Shown here piece by piece: positions 543 to 62,002 of a DNA stretch of 64,000 bases. A model generated the notes under the pieces. It did no database searches and was not told the DNA's origin. It worked only from the letters and a program-made list of their open reading frames with translations. The stretch covers positions 1-64,000 of IMG/VR virus record IMGVR_UViG_3300026097_000876; one strand, 5' to 3'. The position numbers and the translations under genes were made by a program. Position 1 is the stretch's first letter. Each line of letters begins with the position of its first letter.

Positions 543-549
543 GTAAATT

Positions 550-634
550 TGGCGACAGCGTGTAGACGGTGCCTCGCTCCACCGTTTCGTGTCGACCGGG
601 TTACCCCACAGTCCAGATCACTACACTTAACCCA
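550..634 (-). ncRNA. CCA-terminated structured non-tRNA RNA between tRNA-Asn and tRNA-Cys
   Basis: Stems GTGTAG/CTACAC, ACGGTG/CACCGT, GGG-GTAA-CCC; ends GTCGCCA; no T-loop or anticodon arm. Confidence 0.55.
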
Positions 635-640
635 CGAAAG

Positions 641-901: not shown

Positions 902-1074
902 AAAACACATTAGAAAGTGTGCTTATTTTTATTGCCCGATAGCCTAGGATTTGGCAGGGTCTGTCTAATGCGTCTACAAGGTAGCTAATCCTCTACGACG
1001 AGCTAGGACACTTACAGTTCACGCTGGGGTTACCACACTGAACTCAACCCTAAGCACACTTTCTAATGTATTTT
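902..1074 (-). ncRNA. ~170-nt structured element closed by a 24-bp stem
   Basis: Inverted repeat AAAATACATTAGAAAGTGTGCTTA / TAAGCACACTTTCTAATGTGTTTT (one G.U); internal AGTTCA/TGAACT stem; no ORF; promoter directly upstream. Confidence 0.55.
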
Positions 1075-1075
1075 C

Positions 1076-1120
1076 TCTAACTGTTATACACAGTATAAAG
1101 TCGTGTTATTGTTTTGTCAA
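1076..1120 (-). promoter_or_regulatory. Sigma70-type early promoter
   Basis: TTGACA-17 nt-TATACT followed by GTGTATAACAGTTAG. Confidence 0.8.
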
Positions 1121-1121
1121 C

Positions 1122-1221
1122 CTTATTATAAAGCACACTACGGAATCGAACCGTTTTTTGTGTTGTAACACCTATCGCCACGACCTAGTAGCTACTATAG
1201 GCTAGTGTGCTTTATAATAAG
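1122..1221 (-). ncRNA. tRNA-like element lacking a canonical anticodon arm and CCA
   Basis: 19-bp closing stem, TA-GCCT...AGGT D-like arm, ACGG-TTCGATT-CCGT T-arm. Confidence 0.55.
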
Positions 1222-1321
1222 TGCTGGGCTATCCCCAGCTTGACCTATCTTGTAACATCCAGGCCGCCGCCCATTTATTTTTTATAGTGCTTGTAGGTTC
1301 GCGTTACCATTTGCACTTGCA

Positions 1322-1355
1322 TTAAAAAACCCCGGAGTATTTCTACTTCGGGGTT
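1322..1355 (-). terminator. Intrinsic terminator (part of putative attenuator)
   Basis: AACCCCGAAGTA-GAAA-TACTCCGGGGTT followed by U run. Confidence 0.8.
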
Positions 1356-1381
1356 CCGTATAATCTGTTAACTTAACTAAA

Positions 1382-2200: not shown

Positions 2201-2277
2201 TGGTGCCGCTGGAGGGAGTCGAACCCCCAACCTTCTGGACCTAAACCAGACGCCTCTGCCAATTGGGCTACAGCGGC
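2201..2277 (-). tRNA. tRNA-Leu(UAG) with short variable loop
   Basis: TCTGG-TTTAGGT-CCAGA; A73; 77 nt; 5-nt variable region. Confidence 0.85.
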
Positions 2278-2481: not shown

Positions 2482-3078
2482 CTACCTCATTAAAGTAGAA
2501 ACATCAATATATGATTGGTCTAATGTGTTAAAACTAATAGTGTATCTTTCGTCACTAGAGTTTCTTTGAGTCTCATGATAAAGATAACTAGGCCAAATTA
2601 TTAATTTTCCTGCTTTAGTTGGTATTGCAACATTTTCTATATTATATTCTGTATCATGCTGTTTGGTTTCTGACATCTTAAAAACTGTAGTAGGATTTTC
2701 AATTATTAACGCACAATCATCTGGATCACTAGTTGGATAGTATGCTCCACTTAATACACTCTTTTCATGTCGATGTCTTTTAACTTTGCCGCCTTCTTTG
2801 AGAACATTACACCAACTGTTTACAATAGTGTTTTGTTGTATTCCTGCCTGATCGCAATACACACGCAAACAAGCATCAATTGATTGTCGTAAATCAGCCA
2901 TCGCTAACCTTGTAAGAGCACAATCATATCCTCCAATATAGCTGCTAAGTCCTTTCTCTAAGACTCCGTGCATCTGTAGTCCGCTAATTTGAATTTTCTT
3001 CATAATCACATCGTTATCGACTTGATCAGAAAGATCAAACTCTGCTACAAGAGTAGGAAATAGATTGTGCATTAACAC
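2482..3078 (-). CDS. Putative 2OG-Fe(II) oxygenase (TIGR02466-like)
   Basis: HRHE...SGAYY...IIWPSYLYHET...RYTISFN. Confidence 0.8.
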   Translation of the reverse strand: MLMHNLFPTLVAEFDLSDQVDNDVIMKKIQISGLQMHGVLEKGLSSYIGGYDCALTRLAMADLRQSIDACLRVYCDQAGIQQNTIVNSWCNVLKEGGKVKRHRHEKSVLSGAYYPTSDPDDCALIIENPTTVFKMSETKQHDTEYNIENVAIPTKAGKLIIWPSYLYHETQRNSSDERYTISFNTLDQSYIDVSTLMR

Positions 3079-4079: not shown

Positions 4080-4312
4080 TAACGTTGTCTCCCTTGTTTT
4101 ACATCATAATATTTTGGGCCATCGGAAACGAATTCCATGCCTAGTGCTTTACCAAAGTATTCACCTGTTTTATTGTTATACTTCAATACAATTTTATTAC
4201 CAGCAACGCTTACTGTCAACCCGTCTTCTACTCTAAAATTCATAACTTCAGCGTCGACTTCTATATTAGTGTCTACGTTTTTTAATTTGCACGTGTCTTC
4301 GTGTTTAATCAT
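4079..4312 (-). CDS. Hypothetical protein
   Basis: Tightly packed ORF in the operon. Confidence 0.6.
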
Positions 4313-4496
4313 TTTCAGATTCGTCCCATTTAAGAATTTTCATATCTTTTCCTTTGCCTTGAGTTTTAAGATACCCTTTTTCAATCAATGCATCAATAAC
4401 AGCTCCAGCATCGTTAGTAGATTTAATGTACCAGCCAAACGCAGTACCAATAATATATGCAATAAAAATCCAAAATTCGTTTACCCACATTTCCAT
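4305..4496 (-). CDS. Small membrane protein
   Basis: One hydrophobic helix FWIFIAYIIGTAFGWYI. Confidence 0.6.
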   Translation of the reverse strand: MEMWVNEFWIFIAYIIGTAFGWYIKSTNDAGAVIDALIEKGYLKTQGKGKDMKILKWDESEND

Positions 4497-5630: not shown

Positions 5631-6101
5631 TCAGAATACAAGATTGTCAAGTGTTTCTTTTAGAAATTCAATTTCTTCTTTGTTGTGCTTCCAAGCAAAT
5701 CCGCGGCTTTTAAATAGTCCGAGGCTAGTGTCTATATCATAAACCTTGCCAAAGCTATTGGTCATATTTTCGCTACTAGTTGCTAGGATAGTGGTATCGT
5801 TGGCACGATAGAACTGCCACCATTCGTTGCACTCCATCAATGGACCATCTAGCATAGTAGTATAAGTTTTATGTCGATCTACCAAATGACTACGGTTGAT
5901 ACCCATGCGACTTACTTTCTTATAACCATGTTCAGCAAACACACGTAGGGCATCTTCGGTAATTCCTATCACTTGCCAATGGTCAGGACATAGCGACAAT
6001 AGCTCTCCTAGCATACGAGCCCGTTTACTAGTTGGTGCTCGCATATTGCGAATTAGCAAGTAATCGTGATATAAATCTTCTTTGTTCACTTTTGTGTCCA
6101 C
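5631..6101 (-). CDS. Hypothetical protein
   Basis: 156-aa ORF in the operon. Confidence 0.6.
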   Translation of the reverse strand: MDTKVNKEDLYHDYLLIRNMRAPTSKRARMLGELLSLCPDHWQVIGITEDALRVFAEHGYKKVSRMGINRSHLVDRHKTYTTMLDGPLMECNEWWQFYRANDTTILATSSENMTNSFGKVYDIDTSLGLFKSRGFAWKHNKEEIEFLKETLDNLVF

Positions 6102-7712: not shown

Positions 7713-8868
7713 ATATTTCTTTTACCTGTTCCTTGTGCTTGTAATGTGGAATTTTTGACCAAAACCCTGTGCCGTTTGCCGGACTAGTTTCATTTAGACT
7801 TAGCACTAATCTTGTAATTTCTTTGCTATTGTAGTAATTAATTATTTCTTCTGCTTCTTGTTTGTCTTCAACCTGAATCCAAATTGCATTATGTCCAGTT
7901 CCGTATTCTGGACTAGCATATTTTAGTGTGCTCTTAGTATTTCGATTACCATTCTTACTGATAACAACTTTGTGTACACCAACGCCTTCACGGGGTGTAA
8001 TAATGCTTTTGTCTACACCAACTGTTTTCCTAAAGTCAGCGCCTTCAGTTCCTACTTGATAGATTAGTTGCACATCGCCGGGATTGTTAATAATTTTTTT
8101 ATCGTTGATATAATATGATCCATAATTTGCTGTAAATGTTTCAAAATTCTGTTCGAACAGTTCTTTCGCAAACATATAGGTCTTCAAATCAAATGCTGGA
8201 AGATATGTAGGATTATCAACAATAACACTAGTGTCATCCGTAATAAACTCTACACTATTATTTGTTTTTGCTGTGAAATACATAGCACAAATCGGTGTGG
8301 TAGTTTTAGTTACTCCTAAGAATCTATATTTTGTAATTTCTCTTATGTGTTGTTTCTTGGTGTAACGATTTTTATTCGGACGGGTAAGGACCAGTACGTG
8401 GTCGCATGTTTCTTTAAACTTGGATACAAAACTATTTGTTGTTAAAAAGTCTATAGCACTTAATACTACAGTATGTGAAGATTGAACGTCAATATAATCT
8501 TGTTGCAAAACATTCACATTAAATGTTTTATTGTTTAGTGCTTTTTTAAAATTAGTCTTACAAACTAATGTTTGTAAATTATCAATATCACTTGCATATA
8601 ATTGGTTACTAAAAATATGTTCGATACGTTCAATTTCGTCTGGAATAGCTGGCGATAGCGTAGACATTAAACGTTGAGCAAGATACATTAGTAATGTTCC
8701 ACTACCACACTGTGGATCAAAATATGTAGTAGCAGGATCCGAAAGTAAACTATTGTCCAATAAGTCAATTGCATTCTTAGCAAATTGTTCTTCAATAATA
8801 GTTTGTGATCCGCTACTGTCGTATGCTTTTAATTGTGCAAGACGATTGTTTATATTATTGATGGTCAA
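7693..8868 (-). CDS. N6-adenine methyltransferase-like protein with degenerate catalytic motif
   Basis: Motif I FDPQCGSGTLL and YASDID; expected NPPY position reads SAIDF. Confidence 0.65.
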   Translation of the reverse strand: MTINNINNRLAQLKAYDSSGSQTIIEEQFAKNAIDLLDNSLLSDPATTYFDPQCGSGTLLMYLAQRLMSTLSPAIPDEIERIEHIFSNQLYASDIDNLQTLVCKTNFKKALNNKTFNVNVLQQDYIDVQSSHTVVLSAIDFLTTNSFVSKFKETCDHVLVLTRPNKNRYTKKQHIREITKYRFLGVTKTTTPICAMYFTAKTNNSVEFITDDTSVIVDNPTYLPAFDLKTYMFAKELFEQNFETFTANYGSYYINDKKIINNPGDVQLIYQVGTEGADFRKTVGVDKSIITPREGVGVHKVVISKNGNRNTKSTLKYASPEYGTGHNAIWIQVEDKQEAEEIINYYNSKEITRLVLSLNETSPANGTGFWSKIPHYKHKEQVKEIYAKHFN

Positions 8869-11011
8869 AGTATTGTCCTAACGCTCGATTTGCTGAAACA
8901 GTGTTTATAGTATTCATTATACTTGACCATTCGTCAGTTGTCAATCCCGTAACTTGTGCTACAATGCCATTGTCTATATTTGTTACATCTTGTATCTTGT
9001 CAAATTCAAAGTCATTAGCCCAAGCAATGTCTGCTAGTTTATAAATCTGTTTTAAACTATAGCGAATACGTTGCATAGTTACATTTAACTCATCCTCATC
9101 TCTAGCTTCAGGTTGAGCCGAATTTGTCTTAGAACGTGTTTTATTTTTGCCTTCTTCAATATCGTTAGCATTAAATTGTGTTCTGCTACTATTACTATTA
9201 GCGTCTTTGTTTTTATCTTGTAACAGTGCAATAATGTTATCATCAATTTCATTTTGTTTAATACAAGATCCAATGCGATCAATATGGTTGGTAATATCTG
9301 ACAGGAAACGTTTTGAAATTTCTGCACCTGACATAATGTTCCATGCATTACCGTCATAATCATATACATCGCTTACTTCTAACCATTCACTAATTACTGA
9401 TTCAGCGGTACGTCCTGTAGTGTCTGCAACACGCTCGCAATAATCGTACACTACACTAACAAAACGTTCAGGCGCATAATCAAATACTACTACACTTTCT
9501 TTTCCGTCTGCCGGCGACTTACAACGGAAACTACCTTGAAAGTAATCTGCCGCACTCTTGTCGTTATTAATTTGATGTACACTCCACCATTCAGGTACAG
9601 TAGTGCCTTCTAAGAAGCGTCCGCATGTGAGTGTAATAGTGCCGGCGCCACCGTCATGGTCGTTGCGAGAAATTATATCTTTTACTTTTTGTATATTCTT
9701 AACGCCTTTTCCACTTGCATTAATAATCTTACGTTTACAAAAGAACGGATGTGCTTCTAATGCTTGTGCAAATAACCCAATTGCTTCCACGTTATCAGGC
9801 AATACAAATAGTGTATGACGGCTAAGTTTGTCAGCAACATTACTAAATCTTGATGGTGGTTTTTTAAAGTTTTTCATAATAAATGTAATAAACTCATTTA
9901 CACCCATTACATTTTTAAAAGAACCATTTTCAGTTGCAAACAATTTAGAAAATGTAAATCCTTCGTCGCCGAGTAGCTGTTTTACTTTTTCCGGAACATT
10001 AACTAATGCATAGTTGATGTCAGCACGTTTGCGAAACTGATCTGTTAAGAAGTTGTCTTCGTTTGCTTCTAAAAGTTCTTTCCGTATATTTTGTTCGTCG
10101 ATATAATCAAAATTATATGTATCTTCTGAAGCGTATCGTCCACTTAGCATAGTCTTGTACGGAGTTCCGCTTAATTCAACTTTAAGTTTAAATTTTAGAT
10201 TACTCCAAAGACGTTGTGTGTTGTCGGTTGATGTAGCATAATGTTGTTCATCAAAAAATACACTGTCCCATTGTGTGTCAAACATTTGTTTTAAGAACTT
10301 ATTATTACTACCAAAATGTTTATTGATAAACTGTAAACTAACAAACACAACATCAGTGCCTGTAAATTCCAAAGACTTAGTTGTTTTATAGTTGTGGTAT
10401 TTCCAGCCAGCATAGTCAATGTGGTTCTCTTCTCCACCCGGCAATAAACTTGCCCAACTATCATTAACACCTACTTTTGCTGTAACTACTAAAATTTTCT
10501 TAGCACCAAGTGCTCGTGCAATTTCATAGCTAATACGACACTTACCGGCTCGCATAATAGCATTTATAAGCAAGTCACTAGATACCGAACTACGAGTTAC
10601 GGCCCAGTCGATAATGTCTTGTTGATAATCAAAACTATTCCAATCTTCTAGAGCTTCTACGCCATTAATAAGACCGTTGAGTACTTCTCGAACTGTTTTA
10701 CTAGCATCCTTTGCTGTTATGCTGTCAGGAAAATCAAACCATTCACGGTTCTTATCGTCGCGACTTTTAAAATAACCTTTGCGTTGGAGAGTTTTATGTA
10801 ATGCAATATCAGTAATATGCGTAGGAACTTGTCTTGAATAAATTATTTCTAATTTTTCAGAATTCGATGTGCTATCTTGTTGCTCAACCCGTTCTTCTGC
10901 TGTAAGCATAGTCTGTCCAACTTTAAGTTTTACATTGAAAACTTCACCGTCGACTGTTGCTACGCTTTGTTTGCTTTGACTTTTTGTAGTGTAAAGATAG
11001 ATTGTGTTCAT
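8855..11011 (-). CDS. T5orf172/GIY-YIG-like domain fused to SF2 (Res-type) helicase
   Basis: IYLY...KVGQT...REWF N-terminus; MRAGK, FFDEQH, LSGTPY, FLEGTTVPEW. Confidence 0.8.
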   Translation of the reverse strand: MNTIYLYTTKSQSKQSVATVDGEVFNVKLKVGQTMLTAEERVEQQDSTSNSEKLEIIYSRQVPTHITDIALHKTLQRKGYFKSRDDKNREWFDFPDSITAKDASKTVREVLNGLINGVEALEDWNSFDYQQDIIDWAVTRSSVSSDLLINAIMRAGKCRISYEIARALGAKKILVVTAKVGVNDSWASLLPGGEENHIDYAGWKYHNYKTTKSLEFTGTDVVFVSLQFINKHFGSNNKFLKQMFDTQWDSVFFDEQHYATSTDNTQRLWSNLKFKLKVELSGTPYKTMLSGRYASEDTYNFDYIDEQNIRKELLEANEDNFLTDQFRKRADINYALVNVPEKVKQLLGDEGFTFSKLFATENGSFKNVMGVNEFITFIMKNFKKPPSRFSNVADKLSRHTLFVLPDNVEAIGLFAQALEAHPFFCKRKIINASGKGVKNIQKVKDIISRNDHDGGAGTITLTCGRFLEGTTVPEWWSVHQINNDKSAADYFQGSFRCKSPADGKESVVVFDYAPERFVSVVYDYCERVADTTGRTAESVISEWLEVSDVYDYDGNAWNIMSGAEISKRFLSDITNHIDRIGSCIKQNEIDDNIIALLQDKNKDANSNSSRTQFNANDIEEGKNKTRSKTNSAQPEARDEDELNVTMQRIRYSLKQIYKLADIAWANDFEFDKIQDVTNIDNGIVAQVTGLTTDEWSSIMNTINTVSANRALGQYFDHQ

Positions 11012-60664: not shown

Positions 60665-60949
60665 CGCATATACAAAGGCCCCGCACAAGAGAGCTTTATA
60701 TATACTCGCAAGCTCGCATATACAAAGGCCCCGCTGCTAGCTATACACAAAACAAAATTTCCTTGAGGCCCCGCTGCTAGTATCACGGTATCACACACAC
60801 TCTATACAGTGTAGATGCTTGCCGTAGAAAGACTGTGTGTCTAGGTTGATTTTATAGTGTGACTAGGTTGAATCTAGCGTGGGAAGAACCGTAAAAAGCG
60901 TTTGAAAGAAAGGTAAAAAGTATTTGAGAGAAAGGTAAAAAGTATTTGA
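60665..60949. repeat. Direct repeats: CGCATATACAAAGGCCCCGC x2, AGGCCCCGCTGCTAG x2, GAAAGGTAAAAAGTATTTGA x2
   Basis: Positions 60665/60715, 60726/60766, 60908/60930. Confidence 0.85.
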
Positions 60950-61355
60950 ACTATGCCTCTCGTCACCACGGTCAAGAAATTTTTTTTTGGCTATAGATCG
61001 TGCCAGAACCGTAATGCGAATAATTCTTATTTAACATTAGGCCTACAGTATTGGCACCGTAAACCCACCATTAAACTGTCTGAGAACTCGGCCTCTGTGG
61101 GGATAGATCTCTTACTAGCTATACAGTATACAGAGTGTGTGTATAGTATAGTGTAGCATGTTATACAATGTGACCGTTAGCGTAGTGTACGGTGTGTAGT
61201 GTATGGTATAGTGTGTATAGCTACTATAGTGCATAGTGACTTATTGCATACTGTGTGTTTGGCTGTGTGATCTAAATGCGAATTATTTGCATTTAGGCCT
61301 CTGCACTTTTTGTGTATAACTTGTGTATAAGTGTGTGCGAGAATATTGTGTGTAA

Positions 61356-61712
61356 AATCAAACACTTAGCAAATCTTGTGTAAAATCAAGCACTTAGCTC
61401 TGTGCATAAGTCCGCCGTTCGCCGCCTCGTTTGCGTTCGTCCCGTGTAAGTTATTGTTTTTGTTGAGGATTTTGTGTTCGTTTTGTTCTTTCTAAACAAG
61501 CACTTATGTGTTGTGGATAAGCTGTGGATAACTTTTGCGAGGGGTGCGCATAATGTGTATTATGTTAAATGAGAATTGGATGAGGAACGTGCGCTAAGTG
61601 TTTGATATTGTTGAGGTGGGGCCGTGCGCATTTAACATAATACCGGCCGTGTGCGCATATAATATATTATGTTAAATGAAGGTGGGGCGACTTGTGGACA
61701 AGCTGTGGATAA
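61356..61712. promoter_or_regulatory. Cluster of DnaA boxes and IHF consensus sites
   Basis: TGTGGATAA at 61512, 61523 and 61704, TGTGGACAA at 61693; WATCAANNNNTTR at 61356, 61384 and 61595 (minus strand). Confidence 0.75.
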
Positions 61713-61782
61713 CTTTCGGTTCGCGCACCCTCCCTCCTTGTACTCCGGTCTCTTCGTTCCCGCTTGTATGTTTTGTGCCTTT

Positions 61783-61828
61783 GCCCTAACTGTTATATAC
61801 AGTATACGGCCTCGCCGCCAAAAAGTCA
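61783..61828 (-). promoter_or_regulatory. Leftward sigma70 promoter pointing into the DnaA-box cluster
   Basis: TTGACT-17-TATACT-GTATATAACAGTTAGG; no convincing downstream ORF. Confidence 0.7.
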
Positions 61829-62002
61829 ACCTTCTGAGGTCTTGTAAGTCATTGTTTCGTAAGGGAAAAATAAATTAAAAAAAGTTTTTTTCCTCTGTGT
61901 TTTCAATAGCTTACAAAAAAAATAATGCTTGCTTTTTTGCGCAAACGAGGCTATACTGCTTATACAGTAAAAAATTAACTTAAACTATATAGAGGGCTAT
62001 AT

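What the first reader, a model, noticed from the sequence alone, without database searches (positions are those of the whole stretch)
1122..1221. tRNA elbow mimic: acceptor, D and T arms without anticodon arm or CCA
Seen: AGCACAC/GTGTGCT acceptor-like stem extended to a perfect 19 bp, then TA-GCCT...AGGT in the D position and a canonical GGTTCGATTCC T-arm. The anticodon region does not form a 5-bp/7-nt arm. It is the first element downstream of the putative attenuator. Inference: a decoy for tRNA-binding host factors (anticodon nucleases, RNase P, EF-Tu), comparable to tRNA-like Y RNAs.
Basis: partly seen in the sequence, partly recalled or inferred. Interest (0 to 1): 0.6.

Follow-up and report, generated by a model that had tools for sequence, protein, structure and literature searches.

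The report
Phage tRNA-like minihelix RNA cassette
The flagged 100 bases are not a dead tRNA gene: they belong to a conserved, apparently uncatalogued family of tRNA-derived small RNA modules (long closing stem plus T arm, no anticodon, no CCA) found once per tRNA array in many phages and inside phage two-piece tmRNA genes.

Summary
On the minus strand, the strand of the phage's tRNAs, window 1221→1122 forms a perfect 19-bp stem around a canonical T loop. It has no usable anticodon arm and no CCA.

It is not a chance match or a lone pseudogene. A related phage contig (L095) carries the same 80-nt core at 99% identity, while its genes are about 74% identical to the window's. There the outer stem has a different sequence but still pairs.

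A covariance model finds exactly one such element in each of 30 phage contigs. Their 17-bp closing helix covaries: 96% of cells paired, 10 pairs changed on both sides, 0 of 500 shuffles as good. The elements sit inside tRNA arrays or form the intervening sequence of phage permuted tmRNA genes.

Many arrays also hold sibling cassettes with the same stem but no T arm. Window 902-1074 is one.

No Rfam 15 family matches, including tRNA, YrlA and tmRNA. The closest known analogue is T4 species 1 RNA (rnaC).

The likely mechanism is inferred, not shown: the element is co-transcribed with the tRNAs, cut out at the long helix, and released as a mimic of the tRNA top half. Expression could not be checked.

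The parts
1122..1221 (-). El1: the whole stem-closed tRNA-like element (RNA reads 1221 to 1122)
   Evidence: Perfect 19-bp inverted repeat. Fold z = -5.7. Family model R2 scores 76 bits on 1124-1219 (-); note that the model was built with this sequence included.
1203..1221 (-). 5' strand of the closing helix, CUUAUUAUAAAGCACACUA. The inner 10 nt, AAGCACACUA (1212-1203), are the family-conserved acceptor-like strand.
1122..1140 (-). 3' strand of the closing helix, UAGUGUGCUUUAUAAUAAG. The inner 10 nt, UAGUGUGCUU (1140-1131), are family-conserved. No CCA follows.
1140..1154 (-). T arm: stem (A)CGG/CCG(U) with the canonical 7-nt T loop UUCGAUU, directly abutting the 3' strand of the closing helix
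   Evidence: motif at 1142-1152. GGTTC.A.TCC is invariant in 19 family members, partly by construction of the search patterns.
1170..1202 (-). Variable inner arm, GCCUAU..AUAGGU, enclosing the hairpin GCUAC-UAGGUC-GUGGC (1192-1177). Its GG-containing loop is the only candidate D-loop analogue.
   Evidence: MFE structure. Not conserved outside the El1/L095 pair. ARAGORN at relaxed thresholds reads it as a 5-bp stem with a 6-nt loop.
1155..1169 (-). A/C-rich single-stranded linker GUUACAACACAAAAA. CACAAAAAACGG also occurs in the L079 tmRNA intervening sequence.
902..1074 (-). El2: sibling cassette. Its 24-nt arms carry the family-type stem (AAAAUACAUUA.../...UAAUGUGUUUU) and the same AAGCACAC/GUGUGCUU core, enclosing 125 nt with no T arm.
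   Evidence: The one imperfect pair is U.G on the minus strand and C.A on the plus strand.
1092..1120 (-). Sigma-70-type promoter-like site (TTGACA-17-TATACT) between El1 and El2. Its -35 hexamer starts 1 nt after El1.
   Evidence: 11 of 12 matches. Consensus match only.
1223..1239 (-). Small G+C-rich hairpin GCUGGGGAUAGCCCAGC immediately upstream of El1
1322..1357 (-). Intrinsic terminator-like hairpin (CCCCGAAGUA-GAAA-UACUCCGGGG followed by U6) upstream of El1.

Best explanation
El1 is a gene, or gene module, for a small non-decoding RNA derived from a tRNA. It belongs to a phage-specific family that I call EL here.

Shown:
- The family shares a 10-bp acceptor-like helix (AARCACACUA/UAGUGUGYUU) stacked on a 3-4-bp T stem with a canonical T loop.
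- Covarying flank pairing extends the helix to 17-24 bp.
- The inner hairpins vary between members. There is no anticodon arm and no CCA.
- There is one copy per phage tRNA array, on the tRNA strand, or the element forms the intervening sequence of a phage permuted (two-piece) tmRNA gene.

Inferred:
- The element is transcribed with the tRNA operon.
- The long helix brings the 3' end of the upstream RNA and the 5' end of the downstream RNA together, and serves as the excision and protection signal. Candidates are double-strand cleavage by RNase III, and/or RNase P and 3'-end enzymes measuring the roughly 12-bp acceptor/T stack.
- The released RNA of about 80-100 nt presents a tRNA 'top half' (acceptor/T minihelix, possibly an elbow) to a factor that recognises that half of a tRNA.
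- Conservation of the inner helix sequence, not only its pairing, points to a specific partner rather than generic processing alone.
For: - Real and non-random.
- Homologues: L095 core is 99% identical over 80 nt with a different but still pairing outer stem, while the RNR genes are 74% identical at nucleotide level and the genomic location differs.
- Family size: 30 loci, each with exactly one R2 hit at E <= 1e-9. None of the 21 bacterial or archaeal genome loci fetched with the same pattern has a hit.
- Closing helix: 95-96% of cells paired, 8-10 of 17 pairs changed on both sides, 0 of 500 shuffles as good, and slid controls only 31-52% paired.
- Orientation and copy number in arrays.
- tmRNA context: ARAGORN and Rfam call permuted tmRNAs in L079 and L061. 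The element is the inserted intervening sequence there. R2 scores the L079 intervening sequence at 56 bits. In L095 and L079 the helix continues into the tmRNA acceptor stem.
- Sibling cassettes with the same stem and 25-226 nt of other cargo.
- RNA-level selection: the helix is longer on the tRNA-sense strand in 28 of 44 cassettes, on the antisense strand in 7, equal in 9.
- Precedent: T4 rnaC is a stable RNA in the T4 tRNA cluster, with a canonical T arm next to its 3' closing strand and no CCA.
- Literature: permuted tmRNA transcripts are cleaved by tRNA-processing enzymes and the intervening sequence is absent from mature tmRNA (PMC11915505).
Against: - No expression or end-mapping data; no RNA run was listed.
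- In the window El1 lies after a terminator-like hairpin and before a promoter-like site, so it may be poorly transcribed.
- Family members were retrieved with patterns that fix the T loop and UAGUGUG, so the invariance of those letters is partly by construction.
- The inner domain is not conserved and not thermodynamically unusual (z = -0.45). An elbow-forming D-loop analogue is unproven.
- A recurrent A.C mismatch in the helix would be G.U on the other strand.
- No member was found in cultured phages of INPHARED, and no partner protein was identified.
- The closer 2OG-gene relatives of the window phage lack it, apart from the rearranged L038 element.
Confidence: 0.55

Rival explanations
1. 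Pure processing spacer. The element only helps mature its neighbours, by offering an RNase P/RNase III site right after an upstream CCA end and before a downstream 5' end. It is then degraded and has no function of its own.
For: It occupies the slot between an upstream ...CCA and a downstream GG... in arrays and in permuted tmRNA genes, and the helix includes those ends. The intervening sequence is absent from mature tmRNA (PMC11915505). Sibling cassettes use the same stem.
Against: - There is only one T-arm element per array, while most tRNA junctions have none.
- Some phage permuted tmRNAs manage with a short intervening sequence that lacks it.
- In the window it is flanked by neither a CCA end nor a tRNA start, yet it keeps a perfect 19-bp helix.
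- Sequence conservation of the inner helix is not needed by generic tRNA enzymes.
Confidence: 0.2
2. The excised RNA is a decoy or sponge for host factors or defence enzymes that target tRNAs by recognising the acceptor/T half or the elbow.
For: Acceptor/T features are retained while decoding and aminoacylation features are lost. The element is restricted to phages and present once per tRNA array. From my own knowledge, phage tRNA arrays are thought to counter tRNA-targeting defences.
Against: No defence or counter-defence gene is linked to it. Anticodon nucleases need the anticodon loop, which is missing. There is no experimental or comparative link to any target.
Confidence: 0.12
3. Mobile DNA. 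The cassettes are miniature inverted-repeat elements whose conserved termini are transposase or recombinase sites, and the T arm is passenger sequence.
For: - Several copies per array share termini but carry unrelated cargo.
- The core is 99% identical in two phages whose genes are 74% identical, and it sits at different loci.
- Flanks are often TATA-like palindromes, which could hide a target duplication.
Against: - The outer, non-conserved part of the stem still pairs through compensatory changes, which target sequence would not provide.
- The helix is better on the tRNA-sense strand (28 versus 7).
- The T arm always has the tRNA orientation.
- No transposase is nearby, and El1 has no target duplication (flanks CAAC and TGCT).
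Confidence: 0.08
4. A decaying tRNA or tmRNA remnant with no function.
For: There is tRNA-like sequence inside a tRNA cluster. Its nearest homologue sits in a tmRNA-like gene. His and Met tRNAs are missing from the 20-tRNA cluster.
Against: - The helix is a perfect 19 bp and the core is 99% conserved, against 74% for genes.
- The family shows covariation.
- Arrays with the element also have His and Met tRNAs.
- No tRNA in the data set is a close parent.
- The window flanks are not significantly similar to tmRNA pieces.
Confidence: 0.03
5. A bacterial-type Y RNA that binds a Ro60/Rsr protein.
For: It has a long terminal stem plus a T arm. D. radiodurans Yrn1 is described with a 5-bp 'anticodon' stem and a 6-nt loop (PMC4201824), which is what ARAGORN draws here.
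Against: There is no YrlA hit, no GNCGAA motif in the stem, and no TROVE protein among the large ORFs tested. The rest of the 262-kb genome was not seen.
Confidence: 0.02

Closest known systems
Phage T4 species 1 RNA (rnaC), a small stable RNA in the T4 tRNA cluster
   Same: It is encoded inside a phage tRNA cluster on the tRNA strand. It is non-decoding. It has a canonical T arm (CCGGG-UUCGAAU-CCCGG) directly next to the 3' strand of a terminal stem, internal hairpins instead of an anticodon arm, and no encoded CCA. Its function is unknown.
   Different: There is no sequence homology: R2 scores only 17.8 bits. Its terminal stem is short and imperfect. It lacks the AARCACACUA/UAGUGUGYUU helix. 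It is 139 nt long.
Intervening sequence of permuted (two-piece) tmRNA genes (Rfam RF04321, RF01849)
   Same: In L079 and L095 (R2 56 and 67 bits), and in a rearranged form in L061 (no R2 hit), the element is the intervening sequence between ...ACCA and GGGG..., and is expected to be removed during maturation (PMC11915505).
   Different: The Rfam consensus intervening sequence is about 25 nt, A/U-rich and has no T arm. The window copy has no flanking tmRNA acceptor stem, CCA or RF04321 hit. Most family members sit in tRNA arrays, not tmRNA genes.
Bacterial Y RNAs (YrlA, D. radiodurans Yrn1)
   Same: A long stem formed by the 5' and 3' ends plus a tRNA-like module with a canonical T arm. Yrn1 is drawn with a 5-bp stem and a 6-nt loop in the anticodon position (PMC4201824).
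   Different: YrlA has the permuted order T arm, acceptor hairpin, D arm. It carries a Ro60-binding motif and is encoded next to rsr. None of these is met here.
Allo-tRNAs and tRNAs with an 8/4 or 9/3 acceptor/T branch (Mukai et al., PMC5389517)
   Same: A long acceptor stem with a short T stem. El1 can be drawn as 9/3 and other members as 8/4, each giving a 12-bp branch. Such tRNAs occur in phage tRNA clusters.
   Different: Allo-tRNAs keep a 7-nt anticodon loop, a long variable arm and a tRNA-Sec-like D arm, and are chargeable. El1 has none of these and no CCA.
tRNA-like processing signals such as mascRNA/MALAT1 and tRNA punctuation
   Same: A tRNA-like fold without decoding function that recruits tRNA-end enzymes to define the ends of neighbouring RNAs (own knowledge).
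   Different: Those signals are eukaryotic or mitochondrial. There is no homology.

Membership tests
Canonical tRNA (RF00005) | Cloverleaf detected by tRNA finders or the covariance model | tested here: not met
   ARAGORN at default settings calls none here. Rfam gives no hit at E <= 10 in 2 kb or in 136 nt. Only at 70-80% ARAGORN thresholds is a 'tRNA-?' called.
Canonical tRNA (RF00005) | 7-nt anticodon loop with U33 on a 5-bp stem | tested here: not met
   Best drawings have a 6-nt loop UAGGUC, or a 7-nt loop GAUAGGU with A33 and two G.U pairs (read).
Canonical tRNA (RF00005) | Acceptor stem, T arm with GTTCRANYC loop, and 3' CCA as in its neighbours | tested here: inconclusive
   Acceptor-like helix and T loop are met. 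The T stem is only 3-4 bp. CCA is absent, although the neighbouring tRNAs encode it.
YrlA / bacterial Y RNA | Match to the Rfam YrlA model | tested here: not met
   No hit at E <= 10. None at E <= 1 on four other family members.
YrlA / bacterial Y RNA | Module order T arm, acceptor hairpin, D arm inside a Ro60-binding stem with a GNCGAA motif (PMC4201824) | tested here: not met
   The T arm is 3'-most and abuts the closing helix. The stem sequence CUUAUUAUAAAGCACACUA has no such motif.
YrlA / bacterial Y RNA | Adjacent Ro60/Rsr (TROVE) gene | tested here: not met
   No TROVE domain among the 14 window ORFs of 385 aa or more that were scanned, nor among 13 shorter ones. About 200 kb of the genome was not available.
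Permuted tmRNA gene (RF04321/RF01849) | Flanking T arm, acceptor 3' strand and ACCA upstream; GGGG acceptor 5' strand downstream; model hit | tested here: not met
   Met in L079, L061 and, below the gathering score, L095. In the window there is no hit, no CCA, and the flanks are not similar to tmRNA pieces.
EL family (defined here) | Inner helix AARCACACUA/UAGUGUGYUU extended to 15 bp or more by flank pairing | tested here: met
   19 bp, perfect. Family covariation.
EL family (defined here) | T arm with a canonical loop directly 5' of the 3' strand; no CCA; tRNA-strand orientation in a phage tRNA region | tested here: met
   R2 scores 76 bits, but the model includes this sequence. L079, which was not in the seed, scores 56 bits.
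T4 rnaC-type stable RNA | Accumulates as a discrete stable RNA processed from the tRNA transcript | not testable with these tools
   No RNA run was listed. The architecture is analogous.
Miniature inverted-repeat mobile element | Terminal inverted repeats, target-site duplication, multiple copies, empty sites in relatives | tested here: inconclusive
   Inverted repeats and multiple copies are present. El1 has no target duplication. The outer stem covaries and the sense strand is favoured. Empty sites were not examined.

The most novel reading that the evidence does not exclude
Phage tRNA arrays carry a modular cassette system. A conserved helix of about 18-24 bp (CCAUAUnAAARCACAYU.../...ARUGUGYUUnAUAUGG) acts as a universal excision signal, possibly read by a dedicated nuclease. 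It releases a set of different small RNAs. One of them, the EL tRNA top-half mimic (also built into phage two-piece tmRNA genes), binds or titrates a host factor that recognises tRNA or tmRNA, such as a tRNA-targeting defence enzyme or the trans-translation machinery.
Probability: 0.15. Interest if true: 0.85.

Novelty: new variant of a known kind. Interest (0 to 1): 0.62.

Why it matters
Phage tRNA arrays are usually read as codon-supply or anti-defence tRNA sets. This finding shows that many arrays also carry a conserved single-copy tRNA-derived RNA that cannot decode, plus sibling cassettes closed by the same helix.

The same module is the intervening sequence of some phage two-piece tmRNA genes. 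That links tRNA-array biology and tmRNA maturation.

The function of non-tRNA stable RNAs in phage tRNA clusters has been open since T4 species 1 and 2 RNAs were described. A family with dozens of covarying members gives a defined, short and easily synthesised RNA with which to test processing (RNase III, RNase P) and to fish for partners.

It also matters for annotation. These elements are missed by ARAGORN and Rfam 15, and could be mistaken for pseudogenes.

Tried and rejected
- Nucleotide searches of INPHARED with the 861-nt region, a type-A element, the L079 tmRNA gene and a 48-nt 3' end found no family member.
- I fetched relatives through the neighbouring 2OG-Fe(II) oxygenase gene: 46 loci, 416 kb. 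The single-sequence model R1 found nothing. These relatives have smaller, differently arranged tRNA clusters. Only L038 has a related but rearranged element.
- Three other assemblies of the same phage are identical over the 2.5 kb around the element, and differ elsewhere by at most 4 in 10,651 bases. They give no covariation.
- I tested whether El1 replaces the missing tRNA-His or tRNA-Met. Rejected: EL-bearing arrays elsewhere have His and Met tRNAs, and no tRNA is a close parent.
- I tested whether the window's 830-nt non-coding island is a decayed permuted tmRNA gene. Rejected: the flanks are not significantly similar to the tmRNA pieces of L095, L079 or L061 (z < 2.3), and there is no RF04321 hit.
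- My second collection pattern had one T too many (GGTTCRANTCCNNTAGTGTG). It missed the El1 subtype but, by luck, retrieved the members with 4-bp T stems. The genome-contig scan therefore says only that this subtype was not found in species-representative genomes.
- A first G.U versus A.C count was biased by its perfect-seed requirement and is discarded. The strand comparison replaces it.
- A promoter reading of the 3' arm was considered and dropped. It contains TATAAT-like hexamers, but there is no -35 partner and position 2 is not conserved.
- The upstream unit as a classical attenuator: in the MFE the long hairpin and the terminator coexist, so a switch is not evident.
- The look-up of sequencing runs listed no RNA run.

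Full report
**Setting.** The window is the first 64 kb of a 261.8-kb IMG/VR jumbo-phage contig. Three other assemblies carry the same phage. They are identical over the 2.5 kb around the element and differ elsewhere by at most 4 bases in 10,651. Its helicase is only about 24-27% identical to anything in INPHARED. Bases 18-2382 hold ten tRNA genes, all on the minus strand. The cluster continues beyond the window start to 20 tRNAs for 18 amino acids; His and Met are missing. Between tRNA-Gly (1547-1621) and tRNA-Asn (641-716) lie about 830 nt with no ORF of 50 codons or more. On the minus strand, in order of transcription, this stretch holds:
- a sigma-70-like promoter site (1515-1487);
- a short unit ending in a terminator-like hairpin with a U6 run (about 1357-1322);
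- a small G+C-rich hairpin (1239-1223);
- the flagged element El1 (1221-1122);
- a second promoter-like site (1120-1092);
- a second long-stem element, El2 (1074-902).

**The observation.** It is correct.
- Arms 1122-1140 and 1203-1221 are a perfect 19-bp inverted repeat. It is one of only three repeats of that class in 64 kb.
- The T-loop motif at 1142-1152 is one of eight in the window. The other seven are in real tRNAs, against 0.13 expected by chance.
- The element folds at -36 kcal/mol (z = -5.7). All of that signal comes from the closing helix; the inner 62 nt score z = -0.45.
- Standard tools do not see a tRNA, YrlA, tmRNA or any other Rfam family here, even when only 136 nt are searched.
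- With thresholds lowered to 70-80%, ARAGORN draws an 8-bp acceptor stem, a vestigial D arm, a 5-bp stem with a 6-nt loop, a long variable stretch and the T arm.
- There is no CCA, although the cluster's real tRNAs encode it.
- No tRNA from this phage or its relatives is a close parent.

**Finding relatives.** Searching through the neighbouring 2OG-Fe(II) oxygenase gene gave 46 loci of phages at 53-75% protein identity. Their tRNA clusters are smaller and differently arranged, and a single-sequence model found nothing in them. Searching IMG/VR for the T arm plus the start of the 3' strand worked. A second pattern, which I mistyped with one extra T, also worked. Together they gave many hits that ARAGORN does not call and that share one plan:
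- a long closing helix whose inner 10 bp are AARCACACUA/UAGUGUGYUU;
- a purine after the 5' strand;
- variable inner hairpins;
- a T arm with a canonical loop directly before the 3' strand;
- no CCA.

**Covariation.** On a MAFFT alignment of 19 members, the 17-bp closing helix is 95% paired. Eight pairs change on both sides, no shuffle out of 500 reaches the observed values, and slid controls are only 31-52% paired. A covariance model built from that alignment (R2) finds exactly one element per locus in 30 loci at E <= 1e-9. The resulting alignment gives 96% pairing and 10 doubly changed pairs. That alignment is fitted to the model, so it leans toward the structure. None of the 21 loci fetched from bacterial and archaeal genomes with the same pattern is a member. 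Rfam 15 has no match at E <= 1 for four further members. One caveat applies: the T loop and UAGUGUG were fixed by my search patterns. The independent evidence is the complementary 5' strand, the covarying outer helix, and the copy number and orientation.

**The closest homologue.** L095 is an 8-kb contig from a sample that also holds the window phage, and it comes from a related phage. Its RNR genes are 74% identical to the window's at nucleotide level. Its element matches El1 over 80 nt with one inserted G and one C-to-U change that leaves a G.U pair. Identity collapses exactly at the ends of the inner helix. The outer helix has an unrelated sequence (AGCUCCACCAU / UGAUGGGGCU versus CUUAUUAUA / UAUAAUAAG) yet still pairs. 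The element also lies at a different genomic position, next to the RNR cluster rather than in the tRNA cluster. This means either very strong selection or recent transfer of the module. In both cases the flanks have been selected to pair.

**Genomic context.**
- In tRNA arrays of 6-28 genes the element occurs once, always in tRNA orientation. It fills a slot between the CCA of one tRNA and the first G of the next, and the helix includes those ends. Neighbours vary; Lys(UUU) upstream and Met(CAU) downstream are common. Arrays with the element do have His and Met tRNAs.
- In L079, and in a rearranged form in L061, ARAGORN and Rfam call permuted two-piece tmRNA genes. The element is the insertion in the intervening sequence between ...ACCA and GGGG/GGGC. 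R2 scores the L079 intervening sequence at 56 bits, although it was not in the seed; L061 gave no R2 hit.
- L095 has the same layout, with a correct G3.U70, A73 and CCA, but scores below the Rfam threshold.
- The literature says that permuted tmRNA transcripts are cut by tRNA-processing enzymes and that the intervening sequence is absent from the mature RNA. A tRNA inside an intervening sequence was noted once and described as unique (PMC11915505). Two-piece tmRNAs are common in marine phages (PMC9004378).
- A Brevundimonas jumbo phage has an unannotated permuted tmRNA with a short intervening sequence and no element, so the module is optional.
- The window copy has neither tmRNA flanks nor tRNA neighbours. 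My idea of a decayed tmRNA gene failed a similarity test.

**A wider class.** The same closing helix, extended to CCAUAUnAAARCACAYU.../...ARUGUGYUUnAUAUGG, closes many other cassettes in these arrays. Their cargo is 25-226 nt, unrelated between cassettes, and lacks a T arm. One array has up to eight entries (regions found on both strands can be listed twice), and that array also holds a GOLLD RNA. Window El2 (902-1074) is such a cassette, and its one imperfect pair is U.G on the minus strand. Across 44 distinct cassettes, the helix (counting G.U pairs) is longer on the tRNA-sense strand in 28, on the antisense strand in 7, and equal in 9. The sequences are related, so that p-value is only indicative. 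This favours an RNA helix over a purely DNA-level repeat.

**Interpretation.**
- Shown: El1 is a conserved, phage-specific RNA module derived from a tRNA. It keeps the acceptor/T half of a tRNA, has lost the decoding and aminoacylation features, and is always closed by a long helix.
- Inferred: it is co-transcribed with the tRNAs. The helix is the excision and protection signal; at 17-24 bp plus the stacked T stem it has the size of an RNase III substrate. RNase P could instead measure the roughly 12-bp stack, drawn as 9/3 in El1 and 8/4 in the other subtype. The released RNA then acts through its tRNA top half.
- The sequence conservation of the inner helix and the single copy per array argue for a specific partner. 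This is why I rank 'functional small RNA' above 'mere spacer'.
It remains open and has no direct support.
- The Y RNA comparison is an analogy, not membership.
- The nearest known thing is T4 species 1 RNA (rnaC). It also sits in a phage tRNA cluster, has a canonical T arm beside its 3' closing strand, lacks CCA, and still has no known function.

**Limits.**
- No RNA data could be obtained.
- The host is unknown.
- Retrieval was pattern-biased.
- The inner domain could not be analysed comparatively beyond subtypes.
- Only a quarter of the genome was visible.

Noticed in passing
window 902-1074 (-): El2: the second long inverted repeat. Its 24-nt arms are 96% complementary and enclose 125 nt. 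It shares the AAGCACAC/GUGUGCUU core with El1 and the family-type outer stem, but has no T arm. Its cargo holds a possible pseudoknot (GGGUU..AACCC with AGUUCA..UGAACU). A 16-nt stretch (GCUAUCGGGCAAUAAA) is complementary to the leader and 5' end of tRNA-Asn.
   Followed up: partly
window 543-640 (-): A 98-nt spacer between tRNA-Asn and tRNA-Cys has a GGGUUA..UAACCC motif resembling the start of the El2 cargo and possible long-range pairings. Its fold is not unusually stable (z = -0.34).
   Followed up: partly
A promoter-like TTGACA-17-TAATAT site is followed almost at once by a 32-codon ORF (MMNKTMHKNTTEVQSNPAGMFCGWIYDRGSSV, 19 of the 20 amino acids) with no Shine-Dalgarno room. A 16-bp hairpin and a terminator-like hairpin with U6 follow. 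In the MFE both hairpins coexist, so a switch is not evident.
   Followed up: partly
window 2201-2277 (-): tRNA with Leu anticodon UAG is only 77 nt and has a short variable loop. Bacterial tRNA-Leu normally has a long variable arm.
   Followed up: no
window 60700-62000: A 1.4-kb non-coding region holds two exact DnaA boxes (TTATCCACA, each followed by a second similar box), repeated CATTTAACATAATA units in both orientations, and other direct repeats. It looks like a replication origin.
   Followed up: no
window 2482-23035: Auxiliary metabolic genes beside the tRNA cluster: 2OG-Fe(II) oxygenase, ClpP, AhpC/redoxin, an Fe-S subunit-like protein, a ferredoxin-dependent bilin reductase and a GMP reductase/IMPDH-like protein. 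Class I RNR lies at 31.9-35.4 kb.
   Followed up: partly
L038 1937-2100 (+): A relative at 75% 2OG identity has a perfect 24-bp stem upstream of tRNA-Asn. It encloses three T-arm-like hairpins. The first of these, plus the next 9 nt, is 22 of 24 identical to the 3' part of El1. R2 scores it at 40.7 bits.
   Followed up: partly
L065 ~4205-4335 (-), L066 ~5839-5969 (+), L075 ~8699-8781 (+), L064 ~2722-2815 (-): Jumbo-phage contigs (138-394 kb) carry orphan units with two T-arm hairpins in tandem that tRNA finders do not call. R2 hits are weak (19-23 bits).
   Followed up: no
L007 ~10075-10170, L011 ~9570-9665, L017, L044, L047; L010 9138-9239: In 2OG relatives, an uncalled or oddly called class II tRNA-like gene lies directly downstream of a 273-280-aa tRNA-synt_2 family protein. 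It has a 7-nt loop UUGUUUC, acceptor UCUGGGG/CCCCAGA and G-CCA.
   Followed up: no
L087 2987-3452 (+): A GOLLD RNA (RF02032, 188.6 bits) sits inside a phage tRNA array of 23 genes, surrounded by several stem-closed cassettes and about 480 nt upstream of that array's EL element.
   Followed up: no
L163 578-833 (+) = Brevundimonas phage Kabachok ON529852.1, about 194.4-194.7 kb: An unannotated permuted tmRNA gene (RF04321, 57 bits) lies next to tRNA-Cys in a cultured 356-kb jumbo phage. Six sister phages have the same match.
   Followed up: partly
L095 7330-7620 and 8020-8099 (+): Two promoter-driven tmRNA acceptor-piece-like units (T arm UGCGAAU, ...CCACCA) occur in one 8-kb contig. The first has only about 115 nt of 'coding piece' before a terminator and no obvious alanine-rich tag.
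   Followed up: partly
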